This document shows, one piece after another, positions 12,773-63,301 of a DNA stretch of 64,000 nucleotides. Source of the DNA: Gracilinanus agilis (Eukaryota); the NCBI RefSeq assembly GCF_016433145.1, contig NC_058134.1:215265475-215329474 (forward strand), read 5' to 3'. Numbering within the stretch: the stretch's first letter is position 1; each line of letters begins with the position of its first letter. Made by a program: the position numbers and the translations under genes. The notes below the pieces were generated by a model. That model saw only the letters and a program-made list of their open reading frames with translations. It was not told where the DNA came from and made no database searches.

Positions 12773-13959
12773 TTAAGTGCTTTTCCTCTTCTCCTTAGCC
12801 TTCCGGACCTCTTCTATCAAGTCCTTCAAATACTGGATCTCCTTGCTTAGAGAATCTGCCTTCTCCTTCAGAGCCTCATTCTTCTGTTCTAGTTCTCTGC
12901 ACTCCCCAGATAATGCCTCCTGCTCTGCCCTTTTTTTCTGCCTATAACGTGTGGCAGCAGTCTTATTCTGCTCCATTTTCTTTAACTTTTTATCTACCTT
13001 TTTCTCTTTTTTGTCCTCAAGGGGGCGGTCGTATGGCTTAGGATGGGCAGAGAGAAACATGATGGGATCGGAACAGAGCTGACTCTCATTAGGAGAGCCC
13101 ATGGAAGTAGAGGGGCTATGCTGGGGAGAACTGAGATAAGACTCGGGGCTTGTGCAGATCCCAATTCCACTATCATTATCTGAAGGAGCTTCTTCTTCTT
13201 TGATACCCTTGGGCATCATCATATAAACAAGTTCTGGGTTTCTGTCTCCTTCCAAGACATCCACTTCACTACCTAGTTCTAAACTAAAAGAATGGTCTGG
13301 AGTGGAGGTCAGGGCCCTCAGAGAAAGGGGAAAAGACTGATGGGAGGGGAGGGGGGCAACATGATCAGCTTCAAGTGTAGTTTCTGGGAATTGGCCAATT
13401 GAATTTACTGTTAAAGGGGCCTCTTTATCATTAGTTGCCAAGGGGTCGAATAGATCACAAGAGTCTTCCAACGTGGCCATAAGCTCAGAGCAGGTGGATT
13501 CCAGGTCATCCATACCCAGGAGGGCATCGAAGTCAAACTCCTTCAGATCCATTTTCTCCACCATCCAATCCATGCCCGAGAAGGCATCCTCTGCAAAACA
13601 AATAACTTTGTGACCAAGCATCCTAGACTAGAATTCAGTCAGGTATCAATCATCACTATTTCCCTATGACCCATTTAATAGCCTCAGCCCCTTCCCCGCC
13701 AAAGTTTCCATCAAAAAACCCTCCATTTCTTACCCTTGCCAAAGTCTGTGGTAGTAACTAAACTGTCCACAGCCAGCCAATCAGAAGAGGCTGCCTTAGC
13801 CTTGTCGCTGGAGAACCCATGCGATTTGAAGGGCTTGGCCTCCTCCAGGTAGTCATCTAAGGGGCTCAGGCTTTCCTCAGCCCCCAAACCCGACTGGTTG
13901 AAGGGGGACAACAAGTCCCCCCACAACAAGTCGCTGTTGAGGAAGCTCATCTCGGTCAT
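12773..13959 (-). CDS. ATF4: Activating transcription factor 4 (bZIP), 347 aa, 2 coding exons
   Basis: Exon 13734-13959 (MTEMSFLNSD..., donor AAGG|GTAAGA) plus exon 12773-13590 (acceptor TTTTGCAG|AG). Contains DAFSGMDWMVEKMDLKEFDFDALL and the bZIP KKMEQNKTAATRYRQKKR...EIQYLKDLIEEV. Total 1044 nt. Confidence 0.98.
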
Positions 13960-27234: not shown

Positions 27235-30050
<2,816 letters not shown>

Positions 30051-32026
30051 TGCTCCCCTAGGGGAAAGAACAAAAGAAGATATACAATGCTACCAATGAG
30101 TGACAACTTAACCAGTGAAGCCCTCACCCTCTCTAGAACTCCAGGTTGTTTCTGCTCACACCATCCCCACCACCCTTCTGACATCACGTCTCATACCTTC
30201 ACCAACCCATGGAGCCATCTGTCTCCTTCTTGCCTGTCCTTAGACTTCTGGATGGACAAATGCACTACACTGGGTACCAGCCAACCCAAGCCTCTTGCCT
30301 CACCCTGTATGCTTCAGAGGGAGATAACTGAGTCTTATGACACAGTTGGCAAGGTGAGAGTTGGGGGTAAGAATAAGTTCATTTATGATAGGAAGAAAAG
30401 CTCTTCCTTTTTTTATATAAAATTTCTTTAACTCAATGAACATCCTCTTGTCTCATGACGTATAGTCCAGCCGATTCCAATTCCCTGGCTGCATCTATAA
30501 AAATCTGCATGGCTACTTTGGGCTCCATTTCTCCTAAAGAAAGATAGCCCATTATACTGGCAGAGAAGGGTAATAACAAACTCAAATGTGGAAAAGACAA
30601 AACAGGCTGAAAATCCTTTTTGGGTACTCTTTTTGTAACTGTTGAGTTACAAGGTATTTGTTCTGGGAGATAAGTATGTAAATGAGAAAAATGAGAATAA
30701 ACATGTCTATCTAGGTCTGATAGTGATGAACAGAGTAAATACTTCCAGCAAGAGACATACTTGGAAAAGGAAAAAAAAATTCCATGCCATTCAGGTTCAG
30801 TCCCTCTCTCTCATCGAAGATGCCATCAGATTTGGTCTCCTATCTCTAGAGTCCTCAGGGTCACTAGGGATGTTCACTGGTCAGTCTGTATGGTCAATAC
30901 TTAGGTACAAGGATAATTCCCAAACAAGCTTGTATCCTGAATAGTCCCAAGATGGGATAAATTCAGGTCAGAATTATTCTTCATACTGCTGACCTATTTG
31001 CCAGCAATAAGATAAGGACAATCAGCATTACATACTGTGTAGGACCCTGGTCAGATCCCCCATTCCCAGAAGCTCATGGGTACTTAAGATTTTTTACTGC
31101 CTGCCACCAATATCTCCAAAAGCACTTTAACAAGCAATATTTGACCTTTGTTAATAATTCTGTTATGCAAGTTGGGCTGTGGCATTCTTGAACTTCAAGT
31201 TATTGCCTTTCCAGCTGCTGCACAGTCCTCTCCATTACATTAGAATATTAAGCTTCTTGAGGGCAGACACTAATTTGCTAGTCTGTGTATTCCCAGGGCT
31301 CAGCACAGGGCCTGGAACATAGTAACCACTTATAAATAAATGCTCTTGTTCACTTGAATTGCATTGAGTTGATTCCAGTTCTAAACAATGTTAACTTACT
31401 GTTCCATCATTTCAAAAACTCTGCTGTCATCAGTGTTGCCTTCTCCCAGTTTAAGGCTGGTAATATCCTCACATTCTGAGATTCGATCAGATGTCACAGA
31501 AAGAAAAAAGGGCCTTTATTCTTGCTTTCATTCTGCTGAATGTGGCAGGACTAAGCCTTGGGCTAGAGGTCTCAGAAGGCAGTCTCTAAGAGTGTGTGCA
31601 TTCTCGGCCAGATACTTAGGGAGACAAGCCAACTAGAGTTATTTTTACCTCACAGGTCAGGCAAGAATTTCCATGGTGTTACTCGGCTTCCAAGCCCTCC
31701 CCACCCATTATAAAGCTTGCCTAGACAACTCTAACACAGCTAAAATAAACATGATGATATGGCTCTGCTAGTTTTCAAGTCTGAATTTTCACTGCCTACA
31801 AACTATAGGAATCCCGCCCCCCTCCCAGAAACAAAACCCTTCATTTGTGAAATGGGTAAAAGAGCCCCAAAACACTAACAACCTGGGTCTTATCCTGGAA
31901 ATACAGATGGTATTGGGAGGGGGGGGGGCGGGTAATTACAAAGACACCTAGTGCTAGAGAAGCATTCTCCTGGTCTTAGTTCCTGTCACTGAGAAGGAAT
32001 GAGTCTCTGATAAGAACAACTTTCTA

Positions 32027-39368: not shown

Positions 39369-39479
39369 AGTCCTGAGCAGAGCACACTTGGACCCCAATA
39401 AGTTGGCCTTCGAAACTGGAACAGATCTCTCAAATGTCCTAAAGACTCTAAAACAAAGGATCGGTTCCCGGGAAAGAAG

Positions 39480-40830
39480 GTGGGGGCTTTCTAAAGCGAA
39501 CAAACAAGCAGCCCTGATTAGCTGGCTTCAGGTAAGAGAATCCCAGGGCAGGCGAGGGGGTAGTGGAGGCTGTGGAGTGCATGCCTGCGGCCCCCAGAGG
39601 TTCCAGGTGGCCCAGCTCGGAGGTCCAGAAGCCAACCTAGGGGAAAACCGGGGAAGCAGCGATTCTGGCTGGCAGACTCCCCGAGAGAAGGAGCAGGACG
39701 CGAGCTGCGGGAGCAAGCACACAGCAGGCGCTTAATCCGTGCTTTTCTCTCCCTCTCCCCACCCCCCACCTCGGCGCACACAGAAAGCACTTAATCATTG
39801 CCCGCCCATGGCCGGACTTTTACCTACCCGAGCTCCTCAGCGCATTGTGGCCGGGCTCAAACAAGGCGGCCACGCTCCCCGCGCAGGAAGGCCCGGCCCT
39901 TGTCCAGCTGCCTCTGCACTGCCTCCGGGCCAACACCGGGAGGCAGCGGGCGGCGGAACTCACGGCGCACCGCCTCCACGTAGAAGTCACGGTCGGTGTA
40001 GCGCAGCCCGCGGGCCCGGCGCAGCAGGGCCCGGTACAAACCCAGTACCGCGCCGCGGCCGGGCTCGGCCATGAGGGTCCGGGGGGCCGGAGCCGCGCCT
40101 TAGCAAGCCGTCAGCGAGATGGGGAATAGGGCCGGAGTGGGGACGGGAAAGTAACCTCACAGGCCCGCTGCCTCTTCCTCCATGCCGCGGTCACCGGGCA
40201 ACATGGCTGATTTGCTTCCGGGGCAGGACCTCTGTTGAGGAGGATGGGGAACGTGCAGAGGACGAGAAATGGCCTTTGGGGGAGGGACTTCCTGTACTAG
40301 AGGCTACGCCTTCGGGAGACACTCCAGCTCGCTCGTTTGCAACCTTTCTTTCCCTCTAAGCCTCGACCGGAACGGAGTCGTTGGCTGTGGGCGGGGCTTC
40401 GTCTCCTGAATCCTCGATCTTTGAAGACAAGAATATGGGCGGAGCGGCATCACCTCCACTCAGCCCTCCTATTCCCCGTAGGCCCCTCCCTGAGAGGTGC
40501 CGTAAGTGGGTGGAGCTACACCTTACCCTTCACCTCCCCGAGCTCCGCCCGACAAGCTCCCCTCCTTAAACGCCCGGAGGAATGGGGTGGGGCTATGCGG
40601 CTCTCGCTCTATCTGTCGTTTCCTCCAGACACCGCCCCTAACCGTTACGTTGAGAGATGGAGCAGCCCTTTCCTCTCTCTCCCGTCCTATTCCGGTTGGA
40701 CCCCGCCTCCTCGGAGTTACTCGACATATCCTCTTCTTACAACCCTGCGTCCCCTTATCCTTCTGGGACGCGAGAGTAGGAGGGCCCACGCTACAGAGAA
40801 GCAAATGCTCCGGGAATAAATAATCCGAAG
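39480..40830. promoter_or_regulatory. MIEF1 CpG island / promoter
   Basis: High CpG density. On the - strand, CCGGAAG (ETS) at ~40214-40220 sits next to the YY1-like GCCATGTT at 40200-40207. GC boxes at ~40437 and ~40543. Confidence 0.8.
39857..40072 (-). CDS. MIEF1 upstream-ORF microprotein (AltMiD51 / MIEF1-MP / L0R8F8 orthologue), LYR-motif family, 71 aa
   Basis: [41 protein letters not shown]...[18 protein letters not shown] aligns with recalled human [41 protein letters not shown]...RQLEKGLVFLNGKLGRII. It lies on the MIEF1 strand in the leader, followed by a splice donor at 39823-39827. Confidence 0.95.
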   Translation of the reverse strand: [71 protein letters not shown]

Positions 40831-41565: not shown

Positions 41566-42565
41566 TAGAATACCAATGTTAATTAGTTTTAATACTAAAA
41601 AATTCCCAAAACTCCAAGCTAGGGGGGCTTTGAGCACATTCCTCACCTGGGAGCCCCCTTGGCAATGGCACCAAGCTGGGAGAGGGACAGTTTCATGTGA
41701 GAAATAGCCATCAGACAACAGGAAGGGAGGATTCATGAAGAAAGGTGATAATGAAGTAGAGTTAGGAGTATGAGAAATAGTTTGACCCTTACTCTATTTT
41801 AGTAGACCCCTGCCTGTCCTAAATAATAATATTACCCCTATGATTAGTTCTAATCAGTATTATCTAGTTTAATATGATTCCATAGGAAAGGTAATTATTA
41901 ATAGGCAATAATCAGAAGTAACTAGGTATAGGTTATAGTTGAGTAGGTTGTTTCCTATAAGAATCTTTCCTCTCATGTTAAACATTAATTTGTCAACATA
42001 GCATGGAGGGGGCCTCTACCCACATGCCACAAGCTTTAGTTAAAAGTCCCCAGACATTTTAAGAGTCTCTTCACCCACTTCATTCACCATGACCCATACC
42101 ATGCAGGCCTGGGCAAGAGACTTTACTGAATCAGTGAATCATATCATTTTAGTGCCCGTTACTAAGGTGCCCAGGGCCTGGTGCTAAGAGTGGGTGTCTT
42201 GAGGATGGAGAGGCCGATGAGTTGGTTGCTATGTGTCCATCTTATTGTCTGGTAGCAGTGTGACTTAGAGGCATACAAAGAGTTTCGAGTCTACCAATGA
42301 GATATTGTGCTGATGCCTGGAGGATGGGGCTGGGCACTCTGGAGAAGGTGGGGGTCTCAGTAGGTGAGGAAGGTCTGGGATCCTATTTGTTAGAGGATGT
42401 GAGTTCCTCTAATAAAGTTATTGGCTCAGAGCTCTGCCTCAGTTGTTTTAGTTTAGACTGGACAAATTTCTGGTGTTACAGAAGCCAGACATGGGGGCTG
42501 GGGGGAATCTTCATTGCAAAGCTGAGAGCTAAGGATGTTGTATTTGATCCTGGAAGTGAGAGAGA

Positions 42566-44390
42566 GACCTCAAAAATTTTTGAATGTTGAACCATCCTTG
42601 CATTCCTGGTGTAAATCCCACCTGATCATGGTGGATGACCTTCTTAATTACTTGCTGGAGTCTCTTTGCTAATATTCTATTTAAGATTTTTGTATCTATG
42701 TTCATTAGGGAGATTGGTCTGTAGTTTTCTTTCTCTGTTTTTGGTCTACCTGGCTTTGGAATCAGTACCATATTTGTGTCATAAAAGGAATTTGGTAGGA
42801 CTCCTTCTTTGCTTATCATATCAAATAATTTGTATAGTATTGGGATTAGTTGCTCTTTGAATGTCTGATAGAATTCACTTGTGAATCCATCAGGTCCTGG
42901 TGATTTTTTCTTAGGGAGTTCTTTAATGGCTTGTTCAATTTCTATTTCTGATATGGGATTATTTAGGTATTCTATTTCTTCTGCTGTTAATCTAGGCAAT
43001 TTATATTTTTGTAAATATTCATCCATATCTCCTAAATTGTTATATTTGTTGCCATATAATTGGGCGAAATAGTTCTTAATGATTGCCTTAATTTCCCCTT
43101 CATTATAGGTGAAGTCTCCCTTTTCATCTCTAATACTGTCAATTTGGCTTTCTTCTTTCCTTTTTCTTATTAGATTGACTAGTACTTTGTCTATTTTATC
43201 TGTTTTTTCAAAATACCAGCTTCTAGTCTTATTTATTAATTCAATAGTTCTTTTACTTTCGATTTTATTAATTTCTCCCTTAATTTTTAGTATTTCTAAT
43301 TTAGTTTTCATCTGGGGGTTTTTTATTTGCTCGCTTTCTAATTTTTTGAGTTGCATGCCCAATTCATTAATCTCTGCCCTCCTTAATTTGTTAATATATG
43401 CACTCAAGGATATAAATTTCCCCCTGAGTACTGCCTTGGCTGCATCCCACATAGTTTGGTAGGATGTCTCATCATTGTCATTCTCTTCAATGTAATTGTT
43501 GATTGTTTCTATGATTTCTTCTTTGACAATTTGGTTTTGGAGAATCATATTATTTAAATTCCAATTGGTTTTTGATTTGCCTGTCCAGGTGCCCTTACTG
43601 ATTATTATTTTTATCGCATTATGATCTGAGAAGGTTACATTTATTATATCTGCTCTTTTGCATTTGTTTGCCATGATTCTATGCCCTATTACATGGTCAA
43701 TCTTTGTAGATGTACCATGTGCAGCTGAAAAGAAGGTGTATTCCTTTTTGTCCCTATTCATTTTTCTCCACATATCAATTAAATCTAATTTTTCTAGGAC
43801 TTCATTCATCTCTCTTACCTCTTTCTTATTTATTTTTTGGTTTGATTTATCTAGATCTGAAAGAGGAATATTTAGATCTCCCACTATTATGGTTTTACTA
43901 TCTATTTCCTTCTTGAGCTCTGCCAGTTTCTCCTTTATGAATTTGGATGCTATACCACTTGGTGCATATATATTGAGCAGTGTTATTTCCTCATTGTTTA
44001 TACTGCCTTTAATCAGGATGTAATGACCTTCCCTGTCTTTTTTAATCATATCTATTTTTACTTTGGCTTTGTCAGAGATCACGATAGCCACTCCTGCCTT
44101 CTTTTTCTCATTTGATGCTCAAAAGATTTTGCTCATACCCTTAACCTTGAACTTGTGTGTGTCTACCCGCCTCATATGTGTTTCTTGTAGACAACCTATG
44201 GTAGGATTTTGGTTTCTGATCCACTCTGCTATTTGCTTCCGTTTTATGAGCGAGTTCATCCCGTTCACATTCAGAGTTACAATTGTTAGTTGTGTATTCA
44301 CTGACATTTTTGTATCTTCCCCTAGACCCACTCCTTCTTATTACACTATTTTCTTTTACACCAGTGGTTTGCTTTGAGCCAGTATCCCTT
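42566..44390 (-). mobile_element. L1 internal fragment: ORF2 endonuclease, Z-domain and start of RT
   Basis: ORF2 from ~44307 ([56 protein letters not shown]). One in-frame TGA at 44119-44121. Ends abruptly after QGWFNI. Confidence 0.95.
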
Positions 44391-61663: not shown

Positions 61664-63301
61664 TCAGATTTCCCCTGCCTGTGCTGCCCTAGCCACGGCA
61701 CCCTCAGGGCCAAGCCCACCCCCCTCGATCCCCTTCACACCATCCTTAGCACCCACTGTCCCCTCAGCTTGACGGTAAGGATTTTCCAGCAAGTAGTGGA
61801 ATCGTGGGTAATTTCTCAGTAGATATTTGGGGGCATACATATGTTCGCTGGGGTCGGCAGGAGGGTATACCTGCCGAGTACCATCAAACCAGCCACCTGT
61901 ACGGATCAGTTCCCTTATGTAATTCAGGTCCCGCTTGTCTTCATAGTCACCCCAACGGGGGAAGTCACCATTCTGGGCTGATACCATCTTGAAGTAGATG
62001 CCCTCTGGGGTAAAACACCAGGAACAATGCCAGCCTGCAAAGTGGAGTGGGCTGCCCAAGGACCACTGAACCAGGATGTGGCCTGTGCGGTTCTCATACT
62101 GACGGAAGCCAGGCATGGTGTAGTATTGCCGTCGCCTCAGAAGGATCCCGTCTGTGCCATAGACGGTCAACAGCATGTCTATTGTGCAGCCTGACACTAC
62201 TTCGAGGGTGCCAGGTTGTTTCCAAAAGAAACCATAGAGTGATTTGCGCATATGGAAAGCAAAGGGCTCTGTCCAGCCATCATAGAGCTTGAGGAAGAGG
62301 ACTCCATCCCGGGCAGGGATCTCATCCGCATCATCAATGATGAAGACATCATCTGGCCGAAGGTTGCGCAAGCGGGATATGCCATCCTGGGTCAGGAAGG
62401 TCCGCAGATAGTCGTCAGCAATCCATCCATCTTGACGACCCCCTGGCGGAAAATGGTCCAAAAACACATAGAGGACCTTGTGGCGGATGTACTCAAAGCT
62501 GCCATTCCGAAGCATCTCACGGAATTTGAGAGGCCGAGGTTCTCCATAGGCAGTGAAGTTGGATTCGCAAACCACAAAGGCATCGACTACATCACCCAAC
62601 TCATGGAACCGCACATCCAGCAGGTCAAACTCATGGTTGACATTGATGGCATTGATGATCCGCCGTGGGGTCTCCCGGGGCACTAGGCGCTCCTTGGTGG
62701 GCAGGTTTGAGTACTGAACCACAGTGGGCACCCCACAGCTTGGCCCATGCCAGCCAGGCAGACACACACATTCCACCCACTTCCGACGTTTCATCCCCTT
62801 AGACTTCCCATTGGCCAGCCAGTTTCCAATTGTTAGTGGGCGGCGGGCTGTTCCCCCAGAGTTAGGGCCATCTACAGTCTCAAGTGTTTCCTCTGTCTGT
62901 CCTGCTGTGGGTTTCTCCAACATCTTGGTACCTGGCTTGAAGCAGACCCCGCCAGCTTTGGTGCGGACAAAATACTCTGCCCTGTCCTCAGGCAGCACAA
63001 ATTCCAGCCGATGGAGTTCCTCAGTGGCCCCCATCGGGGGCAGGGGCTGCAGCAAGGGAGAATGAGAATAGAGTGGAGTTCGTAGCAGCTCAGGGCCCAC
63101 TGCTCCCCCAGGTTCTGGGCTGGCTTGAGGTGTAATTGGGGCATTGTTCCACAAGAAATTGGCTACCAGATTGGGACTTAGGGAGGCCAGTTCCCGGGGA
63201 AAGGTGACATAGGACAGGGCCTTAAGGAAGTGCAGGAAGGAGATGAGGCACAGGCCAGCCATACAGAGAGTCAAAAAGAGTTTATGACGTCTCATCTTCA
63301 T
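61664..63301 (-). CDS. MGAT3: Beta-1,4-mannosyl-glycoprotein 4-beta-N-acetylglucosaminyltransferase (GnT-III, GT17), 545 aa, single coding exon
   Basis: MKMRRHKLFLTLCMAGLCLISFLHF type-II anchor, CVCLPGWHGPSCGVP, DxD-type IIDDADEIP, and AGWHCSWCF. Acceptor TTGATTGCAG|G one nt before the ATG. Confidence 0.98.
   Translation of the reverse strand: MKMRRHKLFLTLCMAGLCLISFLHFLKALSYVTFPRELASLSPNLVANFLWNNAPITPQASPEPGGAVGPELLRTPLYSHSPLLQPLPPMGATEELHRLEFVLPEDRAEYFVRTKAGGVCFKPGTKMLEKPTAGQTEETLETVDGPNSGGTARRPLTIGNWLANGKSKGMKRRKWVECVCLPGWHGPSCGVPTVVQYSNLPTKERLVPRETPRRIINAINVNHEFDLLDVRFHELGDVVDAFVVCESNFTAYGEPRPLKFREMLRNGSFEYIRHKVLYVFLDHFPPGGRQDGWIADDYLRTFLTQDGISRLRNLRPDDVFIIDDADEIPARDGVLFLKLYDGWTEPFAFHMRKSLYGFFWKQPGTLEVVSGCTIDMLLTVYGTDGILLRRRQYYTMPGFRQYENRTGHILVQWSLGSPLHFAGWHCSWCFTPEGIYFKMVSAQNGDFPRWGDYEDKRDLNYIRELIRTGGWFDGTRQVYPPADPSEHMYAPKYLLRNYPRFHYLLENPYRQAEGTVGAKDGVKGIEGGGLGPEGAVARAAQAGEI

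What the first reader, a model, noticed from the sequence alone, without database searches (positions are those of the whole stretch)
39857..40072. Bicistronic MIEF1: a 71-aa LYR microprotein in the 5' leader, ~9.8 kb upstream of the MiD51 start
Seen: an intact ATG-TGA ORF inside the MIEF1 CpG island, on the MIEF1 strand, with LYR (LYRALLR), YTDRDFY and REFR motifs, and a splice donor ~30 nt after the stop that can join the exon at 30057. Known: in human this is AltMiD51/L0R8F8, an LYRM protein that binds mitochondrial acyl-carrier protein and MALSU1 on late mitoribosomal large-subunit intermediates. Inference: one marsupial mRNA encodes both a mitoribosome assembly factor and a fission receptor, and this arrangement dates to the therian ancestor. 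The system is known in human but easily missed in marsupial annotations.
Basis: partly seen in the sequence, partly recalled or inferred. Interest (0 to 1): 0.85.

Follow-up and report, generated by a model that had tools for sequence, protein, structure and literature searches.

The report
Opossum copy of MIEF1 leader microprotein
This is the opossum version of a well-studied small mitochondrial protein (AltMIEF1/L0R8F8) encoded ahead of the MiD51 fission-receptor coding sequence in the same gene; it is real and under selection, but it is already described across vertebrates and already annotated in marsupial genomes.

Summary
An intact 71-codon ATG-TGA ORF lies at 39857..40072 on the minus strand, inside a CpG island. 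It passes the Pfam Complex1_LYR gathering score. It matches the human and mouse MIEF1 upstream-ORF protein chains seen in mitoribosome assembly intermediates (E 5e-18 and 1e-15). The model is a three-helix LYR bundle.

MiD51 coding exons follow on the same strand, with the ATG at 30050. MGAT3 and ATF4 flank the gene as in human. A wallaby cDNA-type contig carries the orthologous ORF spliced directly onto the MiD51 start exon, and it maps collinearly on this window. Opossum-wallaby dN/dS is 0.24 (P=0.001), with no indels in the ORF.

Two side claims are not:
- The arrangement is far older than therians. It is seen in birds and turtles here, and the literature reports it from human to zebrafish.
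- It is not missed in marsupial annotation. RefSeq names it in three marsupials, and gene models with exactly this product exist for two opossum assemblies.

The 39828|30057 splice was not shown directly in this species.

Minor extras are a long, GC-driven marsupial stem branch, a short 36-43 nt spacer with a conserved AUG-CGC-UGA minicistron, and a retained mini-intron upstream. Verdict: already known, low interest.

The parts
39857..40072 (-). AltMIEF1 (MIEF1 upstream ORF, LYR-family microprotein) coding sequence, 71 codons plus TGA
   Evidence: ORF. Pfam PF05347 scores 28.4 bits against a cut-off of 24.8. Human 5ool_v E 5e-18 and mouse 9e9c_v E 1.4e-15. Marsupial orthologues are 89-92% identical. 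dN/dS is 0.24.
39828..40184 (-). Leader exon carrying the ORF (minimum extent; the 5' end is provisional)
   Evidence: The X20 contig is identical to the genome over 40001-40184. Wallaby cDNA contig L001 starts at the homologous position and aligns up to the donor.
39822..39830 (-). Splice donor CGG|GTAGGT (exon ends at 39828); an alternative GT lies 4 nt further on
   Evidence: Sequence. The wallaby cDNA junction falls at the homologous place. A GTAGGT donor 12 nt after the stop is also present in sauropsid contig L006.
30058..39827 (-). Intron between the leader exon and the MiD51 start exon (about 9.8 kb)
   Evidence: Inferred from collinear mapping of the wallaby cDNA. It was not shown by reads of this species.
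29901..30057 (-). MiD51 start exon (ATG at 30050, context GGAGCAATGG)
   Evidence: An annotated MID51-like product starts 10,022 nt after the uORF ATG in assembly GCA_016433145.1, which equals window 30050.
29074..29251 (-). MiD51 coding exon
   Evidence: Wallaby cDNA mapping with AG/GT borders. The spliced translation is 93% identical to wallaby without gaps.
28693..28955 (-). MiD51 coding exon
27235..28041 (-). MiD51 last coding exon (MID51-like_C and Mab-21_C domains; stop at 27237-27235)
39838..39846 (-). AUG-CGC-UGA minicistron in the intercistronic spacer
   Evidence: Present in opossum and wallaby and absent in the bird contigs. Its function is not tested.
40157..40204 (-). Short upstream ORF (ATG at 40204 and in-frame ATG at 40183; TGA at 40159-40157) overlapping a GTGAGG donor
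   Evidence: Both marsupial contigs begin at about 40184/5, so it may lie at or before the transcript's 5' end.
40099..40160 (-). Candidate 62-nt mini-intron (GTGAGG...CTGAC...AG), homologous to a roughly 61-nt mini-intron in bird contigs; retained in the marsupial contigs seen
39600..40800 (.). CpG island / promoter region
   Evidence: GC 0.635, CpG o/e 0.78.

Best explanation
The ORF is the didelphid orthologue of AltMIEF1 (altMiD51, MIEF1-MP, L0R8F8), a LYR-motif three-helix microprotein encoded in the 5' leader of the MIEF1 gene.

Shown here:
- The ORF, its family membership and its specific similarity to L0R8F8.
- Its position on the MiD51 strand, about 9.8 kb upstream of the MiD51 ATG exon.
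- Purifying selection on the protein frame.
- In wallaby, a spliced mRNA-type sequence carrying both ORFs.

Inferred for this species:
- The leader exon (about 40184-39828) is spliced at 39828 onto 30057. This gives an mRNA in which the LYR ORF is followed after 36 nt by the MiD51 AUG.
- Scanning ribosomes meet the LYR AUG first. Its context is ACCCUCAUGG, with C at -3 and G at +4, which is intermediate. Most therefore make the microprotein.
- A fraction leak past. The ORF has no other AUG in any frame. These ribosomes reach the strong MiD51 AUG (GGAGCAAUGG), possibly via the 2-codon AUG-CGC-UGA minicistron.
- Reinitiation after 71 codons with a 36-nt spacer should be inefficient.

By homology with the solved human and mouse complexes, the protein enters mitochondria. 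There it binds acylated mitochondrial ACP through the LYR bundle and binds MALSU1 on the late large-subunit mitoribosome intermediate.
For: - Family and orthology: Pfam Complex1_LYR is above the gathering score. phmmer against the PDB gives the MIEF1 upstream ORF protein in human (E 5e-18) and mouse (E 1.4e-15), against LYRM4 at only 0.022.
- Fold: the AF2 model has three helices (4-20, 25-39, 49-64). The top Foldseek hits are L0R8F8 chains 7o9k_v and 9hcd_v (TM 0.64-0.71), then ISD11-ACP.
- Conserved residues: L12, Y13, R14, F39 and 29 further columns are invariant across 13 amniote sequences.
- Genomic context: MiD51 exons lie on the same strand. The order MGAT3-MIEF1-ATF4 is kept.
- Transcript in wallaby: contig L001 has the ORF at 137-352 and the MiD51 ATG at 396, spliced across at least 3 junctions, and it is collinear with the window.
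- Selection: opossum-wallaby shows 23 differences, 15 at third positions, dN/dS 0.24, Fisher P 0.001, and no indel in 216 nt. There are 4 indel events in the upstream leader and 2 in the spacer.
- Sister opossum: 1 third-position difference in 91 nt of ORF against about 20 in 284 nt upstream. The protein is identical in two opossum assemblies.
- Own species: a contig covers 40001-40184 exactly.
- Leader AUG inventory.
- Human biology: PMC5703645, PMC6283296, PMC11293456.
Against: - No read or contig of this species spans the 39828 donor or the 39828|30057 junction. The one read-laying run allowed could not cover both sides.
- The library type of X20 is not on record. The X7 contig of the sister species extends upstream to 40356, so the 5' end is uncertain.
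- No Ribo-seq or mass-spectrometry data were available, so translation in marsupials is inferred.
- The AF2 model is only moderately confident (pLDDT 74.8) and the Foldseek E-values are weak (1e-3), as expected for 71 residues.
- Absence of internal AUGs is not significant in any single sequence (P 0.07-0.36).
- Marsupial dN/dS (0.24) is higher than in sauropsids (0-0.14) and in MiD51 (0.08), so constraint may be somewhat relaxed.
Confidence: 0.9

Rival explanations
1. The LYR ORF and MiD51 are made from separate transcripts in opossums. The leader exon would belong to a short monocistronic mRNA, and MiD51 mRNAs would start elsewhere, so the gene would not be functionally bicistronic in this species.
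For: No contig of this species or its sister bridges the donor. In the second opossum assembly no MiD51 gene model starts within 10 kb downstream of the ORF.
Against: The wallaby cDNA contig joins the two ORFs. A consensus-like donor and acceptor sit at the homologous sites. In the first assembly the MID51 model starts exactly at window 30050. Human co-expression from one transcript is shown experimentally (PMC5703645).
Confidence: 0.06
2. The ORF is kept only as a translational brake on MiD51, as a regulatory uORF. Its peptide would have no function of its own in marsupials.
For: In human cells, disrupting the uORF raises MiD51 (PMC6283296), so a regulatory role exists. Marsupial sequences diverged strongly from other amniotes.
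Against: Amino-acid-level constraint holds: dN/dS is 0.24, the LYR, TDRDFY and REFR blocks are invariant, there are no indels, and the LYR fold is retained. A purely regulatory uORF does not need a conserved LYR domain.
Confidence: 0.03
3. It is a chance ORF in a GC-rich, stop-poor CpG island.
For: Many ORFs of similar or greater length overlap the island on both strands.
Against: Only this frame has a family hit, full-length orthologues from marsupials to birds, and third-position-biased substitution.
Confidence: 0.01

Closest known systems
Human AltMIEF1 / altMiD51 / MIEF1-MP (UniProt L0R8F8; PDB 5OOL chain v and 28 further entries)
   Same: The two are orthologous. Length is 70-71 aa, and the [10 protein letters not shown] and REFR blocks are shared. 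The alignment is full-length (E 5e-18) and the fold is the same. Both ORFs lie in the MIEF1 leader in the exon spliced directly onto the MiD51 ATG exon.
   Different: - About 57% identity only. Marsupials have one extra residue in a Pro/Gly-rich helix 2-3 loop, and Lys is almost entirely replaced by Arg.
- The spacer is 36 nt (predicted) in opossum and 43 nt in wallaby, against 98 nt in human.
- The human ORF is in exon 2. The marsupial contigs seen run unspliced through the homologous mini-intron.
RefSeq marsupial entries 'mitochondrial ribosome and complex I assembly factor AltMIEF1' (Macrotis lagotis, Notamacropus eugenii) and 'MIEF1 upstream open reading frame protein-like' (Antechinus flavipes)
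   Same: All are 71 aa, 89-92% identical, with the same loop insertion. In the wallaby assembly a 465-aa MID51 product starts 7.7 kb downstream.
   Different: There are a few substitutions, for example Y25 in opossum against L or F in the others.
LYRM4 / ISD11 and other LYRM proteins (Complex1_LYR, PF05347)
   Same: They share the three-helix LYR fold that binds acyl-ACP. Foldseek TM is 0.70-0.72 to ISD11 in ISD11-ACP complexes.
   Different: They are distant paralogues (E 0.02, about 31% identity), have different client proteins, and are stand-alone genes rather than leader ORFs.

Membership tests
LYRM superfamily (Pfam Complex1_LYR, PF05347) | Profile match above the curated gathering score | tested here: met
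   28.4 bits against a cut-off of 24.8, residues 8-59. PF13232 is also above its cut-off.
LYRM superfamily (Pfam Complex1_LYR, PF05347) | L-Y-R/K tripeptide in helix 1 and a conserved downstream Phe in helix 2 | tested here: met
   L12-Y13-R14 and F39 are invariant in 13 sequences. They lie in predicted helices 4-20 and 25-39. That these residues define the family is from my own knowledge of the LYRM literature; PMC5703645 reports that a LYR-to-AAA mutant loses activity.
LYRM superfamily (Pfam Complex1_LYR, PF05347) | Three-helix bundle fold | tested here: met
   The AF2 model has pLDDT 74.8 and three helices. The best PDB matches are all LYR proteins.
AltMIEF1 / L0R8F8 orthologue group | Closest to L0R8F8 rather than to other LYRM paralogues, over the full length | tested here: met
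   E 5e-18 over residues 2-71, against 0.022 for LYRM4. Named orthologues appear.
AltMIEF1 / L0R8F8 orthologue group | Encoded upstream of, and on the same strand as, the MiD51 coding exons of MIEF1 | tested here: met
   Flanking MGAT3 and ATF4 are as in human; the synteny comparison is from my own knowledge.
AltMIEF1 / L0R8F8 orthologue group | Present on the same mature mRNA as the MiD51 CDS (bicistronic) | tested here: inconclusive
   This is met in wallaby contig L001. It is not shown for this species, because no contig spans the donor.
AltMIEF1 / L0R8F8 orthologue group | Translated; binds mitochondrial ACP and MALSU1 on the mt-LSU intermediate | not testable with these tools
   This is known only for human and mouse structures.

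The most novel reading that the evidence does not exclude
Marsupials may have rewired the MIEF1 leader in three ways. The mini-intron upstream of the ORF is retained, putting the LYR ORF in the first exon inside the CpG island. The intercistronic spacer shrank from 98 nt to 36-43 nt and gained a conserved AUG-CGC-UGA minicistron that sets how many ribosomes reach the MiD51 AUG. GC-biased substitution remodelled the microprotein (Lys to Arg, a Pro/Gly loop with one extra residue) along a long marsupial stem branch while keeping the ACP/MALSU1-binding core. If so, the ratio of microprotein to MiD51 would be set differently in marsupials than in eutherians.
Probability: 0.12. Interest if true: 0.35.

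Novelty: already known. Interest (0 to 1): 0.15.

Why it matters
It confirms that the dual-coding design of MIEF1 is intact in didelphid marsupials. In this design a mitoribosome assembly microprotein and a mitochondrial fission receptor are made from one gene. The result gives exact coordinates for the ORF, the donor and acceptor, and the MiD51 exons. It adds nothing categorically new: the system is characterised structurally and functionally in human and mouse, is reported as conserved across vertebrates, and is already in marsupial RefSeq annotation. The marsupial-specific leader features and the GC-driven divergence of the protein are small comparative points that could inform work on how uORF-encoded proteins and their downstream CDS are balanced.

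Tried and rejected
- Read laying on 39450-40450 with two runs of the window's species and two of a sister species. Only short contigs lay on the 5' half of the exon. There were no joints and no loose ends at 39828, so the splice could not be shown. The single call allowed and the 6,000-letter limit ruled out covering both 39828 and 30057.
- The look-up of encoding contigs for the exact 71-aa product. It returned only two chromosome-scale NCBI records without DNA, and no transcriptome contig of this species.
- Contigs L006/L007 and L008 carry the ORF but no MID51 exon within reach. The 246-aa and 195-aa upstream 'genes' called on L008 and L002 have no Pfam hit and look like gene-caller artefacts in GC-rich DNA.
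- AUG depletion inside the ORF as a leaky-scanning signature. There are zero internal AUGs in all five sequences, but each test is non-significant.
- The bacterial promoter/terminator scan does not apply to a eukaryotic CpG-island promoter and found nothing.
- Chance-ORF reading: rejected.
- Naming the species. From memory, GCA_016433145.1 is the agile gracile opossum assembly and GCA_027887165.1 is a Monodelphis domestica assembly. The 10,022-nt spacing matches the former. I could not verify this with the tools.

Full report
**Observation.** On the minus strand an ATG at 40072-40070 opens a 71-codon frame that closes with TGA at 39859-39857. An in-frame TAA lies 30 nt upstream of the ATG, so the frame cannot be much longer. 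After the stop, 29 nt lead to CGG|GTAGGT, so the exon would end at 39828. The sequence ...cccctAG|GGGAGCAATGG puts an acceptor at 30057 and an ATG at 30050. Positions 39600-40800 have GC 0.635 and CpG o/e 0.78. ORF length is not informative in this stop-poor DNA: 15 ORFs of 40 aa or more overlap 39600-40400, some longer than this one. Four of these alternatives gave no Pfam hit.

**What it is.**
- The product scores 28.4 bits on Pfam Complex1_LYR, where the gathering score is 24.8.
- Against all PDB chains the best matches are the 'MIEF1 upstream open reading frame protein / AltMIEF1' of human (5ool_v and 28 more entries, E 5e-18, residues 2-71) and its mouse counterpart (E 1.4e-15). The next LYR protein, LYRM4, is at E 0.022.
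- A search of 5.8 billion proteins returned 71-aa marsupial orthologues at 89-92% identity. They are named AltMIEF1 or 'MIEF1 upstream ORF protein-like' in Antechinus, Macrotis and Notamacropus. It also returned 70-aa orthologues in a pangolin, turtles and many birds.
- In a 13-sequence alignment 33 columns are invariant, including L12-Y13-R14 and F39.
- An AlphaFold2 model (pLDDT 74.8) has three helices. Its best structural matches are the L0R8F8 chains in human and mouse large-subunit mitoribosome assembly intermediates, then ISD11 in ISD11-ACP complexes, then complex I LYR subunits.

**Context.** On the same strand downstream lie the MiD51 coding exons: 30057-29901 (ATG at 30050), 29251-29074, 28955-28693 and 28041-27235. 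All have AG/GT borders, and the last carries the MID51-like_C and Mab-21_C domains. Spliced together they give 465 codons. The first 204 are 93% identical to wallaby MiD51 without gaps. A GT17 glycosyltransferase ORF (MGAT3-like) lies upstream at 61664-63301, and a bZIP ORF with ATF4-like layout lies downstream at 12773-13959. From my own knowledge, this is the human 22q13.1 gene order.

**Transcript evidence.**
- A Logan contig (L001, 1,009 nt) encodes a product identical to the Notamacropus eugenii protein at 137-352. Forty-three nt later it reaches an ATG opening 204 codons of MiD51 that run off the contig end.
- L001 maps on this window in four collinear blocks with the introns removed. 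The block ending at 39832 abuts the block beginning at the 30057 acceptor. The opossum mRNA predicted from a 39828|30057 join aligns straight through the wallaby junction.
- L001 is therefore either cDNA or, less likely, a retrocopy. The annotated wallaby locus has the MID51 product starting 7.7 kb downstream of the ORF.
- For the window's own species, the single read-laying run showed one 184-nt contig of a small run (X20, library type not on record). It is identical to 40001-40184 and so covers the ORF start and 112 nt of leader. The DNA run X19 covers everything and is probably the assembly's source.
- No contig reached the donor, so the splice in this species is inferred, not shown.
- Gene models with exactly this 71-aa product are on record for two NCBI assemblies. 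In one, a MID51-like product begins 10,022 nt after the ORF's ATG, which is window 30050.

**Selection.**

| Comparison | Result |
|---|---|
| Opossum vs wallaby, LYR ORF | 23 differences in 216 nt (3/5/15 by codon position); Sd 14 of S 63, Nd 9 of N 150; dN/dS 0.24; Fisher P 0.001 |
| Opossum vs wallaby, indels | none in the ORF; 4 events in the ~112-nt upstream leader; 2 in the 29-nt spacer |
| Sister opossum contig | 1 third-position, synonymous change in 91 nt of ORF; about 20 differences plus a 4-nt deletion in 284 nt upstream |
| Two opossum assemblies | the 71-aa protein is identical |
| Sauropsid pairs, LYR ORF | dN/dS 0.13-0.14; two bird sequences have 8 synonymous and 0 non-synonymous changes |
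| Opossum vs wallaby, MiD51 N-terminus | dN/dS 0.08 |

The protein frame is under purifying selection in marsupials, perhaps a little less strictly than in sauropsids or in MiD51.

**How it most likely works.** The function is taken from the solved human and mouse complexes and the literature. The LYR bundle binds acylated mitochondrial ACP and MALSU1 on the late mt-LSU, probably preventing premature subunit joining. In human cells the microprotein is 2-6 times more abundant than MiD51, and shortening the uORF raises MiD51 (PMC6283296).

For the marsupial mRNA the following steps are inferred from sequence:
- Both marsupials have the same context at the LYR AUG, ACCCUCAUGG (C at -3, G at +4). 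This context is intermediate.
- There is no further AUG in any frame until an AUG-CGC-UGA minicistron, which has A at -3.
- The MiD51 AUG follows in a strong context, GGAGCAAUGG.
- The spacer is 36 nt (predicted) in opossum and 43 nt in wallaby, against 98 nt in human.
- After a 71-codon ORF and so short a spacer, reinitiation should be poor. Leaky scanning past the LYR AUG is therefore the likelier route to MiD51, with the ORF acting as both a coding sequence and a brake.

The identification, the donor and acceptor, and the bicistronic logic are supported. The age is understated. Bird genomic contig L002 carries the ORF, identical to the Harpia protein, about 4 kb upstream of MID51 exons on the same strand. 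PMC5703645 reports conservation with MiD51 from human to zebrafish. The claim that it is easily missed in marsupial annotation is not borne out. The scan's notes hold no earlier record of this system on other DNA. One neighbouring note on this window (s1-153939) concerns the short ORF upstream.

**Marsupial peculiarities (minor, partly followed up).**
1. Marsupial proteins are 54-64% identical to both eutherian and sauropsid orthologues, which are 69-80% identical to each other. Gly+Ala+Arg+Pro make up 35-39 of 71 residues against 21-27 of 70, and there is one Lys against 2-5. ORF GC is 0.74-0.78. This is a long, GC-driven stem branch.
2. Birds have a clear roughly 61-nt mini-intron ending 30 nt before the ATG, which agrees with 'exon 2' in human. 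The homologous 62-nt GTGAGG...CTGAC...AG segment (40160-40099) is retained in both marsupial contigs. Both contigs begin at the homologous gCATG, about window 40184.
3. The AUG-CGC-UGA minicistron is shared by opossum and wallaby but absent in birds.

**Verdict.** This is a correct reading of a known system. The ORF is real, it is an orthologue, and it is constrained. Novelty: already known. Interest: low.

Noticed in passing
window 40099-40204 (-): A short upstream ORF (ATG at 40204, in-frame ATG at 40183) ends at a TGA (40159-40157) that overlaps a GTGAGG donor. A 62-nt GT...CTGAC...AG segment follows, homologous to a roughly 61-nt mini-intron in bird contigs L002/L008. If it were spliced out, the short ORF would lose its stop and run in another frame across the LYR ATG to the TGA at 39989-39987. 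Both marsupial contigs retain the segment and start at about 40184, so the short ORF's AUG may be at or before the cap. This is the subject of note s1-153939.
   Followed up: partly
window 39838-39846 (-); L001 370-378: An AUG-CGC-UGA two-codon minicistron (A at -3) lies between the LYR stop and the donor. It is conserved between opossum and wallaby and absent in the bird and sauropsid contigs, where only 9-12 nt separate the stop and the donor.
   Followed up: partly
window 39857-40072 (-) compared with alignment A1: The marsupial AltMIEF1 clade sits on a long branch: 54-64% identity to eutherian and sauropsid orthologues, which are 69-80% identical to each other. There is a strong shift to Gly/Ala/Arg/Pro, near-total Lys-to-Arg replacement and a one-residue loop insertion. 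GC3 is 0.83-0.92.
   Followed up: partly
window 12773-13959 (-): ATF4-like gene: a bZIP ORF of 282 aa with an 82-aa ORF just upstream on the same strand. It lies downstream of MIEF1 as in human and has its own GC-rich island at about 14-15 kb.
   Followed up: no
window 61664-63301 (-): An intact 545-aa single-exon ORF with a Glyco_transf_17 domain (MGAT3-like), upstream of MIEF1.
   Followed up: no
window 42529-44091 (-): A 520-aa ORF with endonuclease and reverse-transcriptase domains in AT-rich DNA. It is a LINE fragment just upstream of the MIEF1 CpG island.
   Followed up: no
window 40185-40356: A contig of the sister species' RNA-labelled run (X7) continues about 170 nt upstream of where the other contigs start. 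Possible causes are an upstream or divergent (bidirectional-promoter) transcript, or DNA carry-over. ETS-like CCGGAAG/CAGGAAGT motifs lie at about 40215-40295 on the minus strand.
   Followed up: no
second assembly record: In GCA_027887165.1 no MID51 gene model starts within 10 kb downstream of the identical 71-aa ORF, unlike in GCA_016433145.1. The first intron is longer there, or the models are arranged differently.
   Followed up: no
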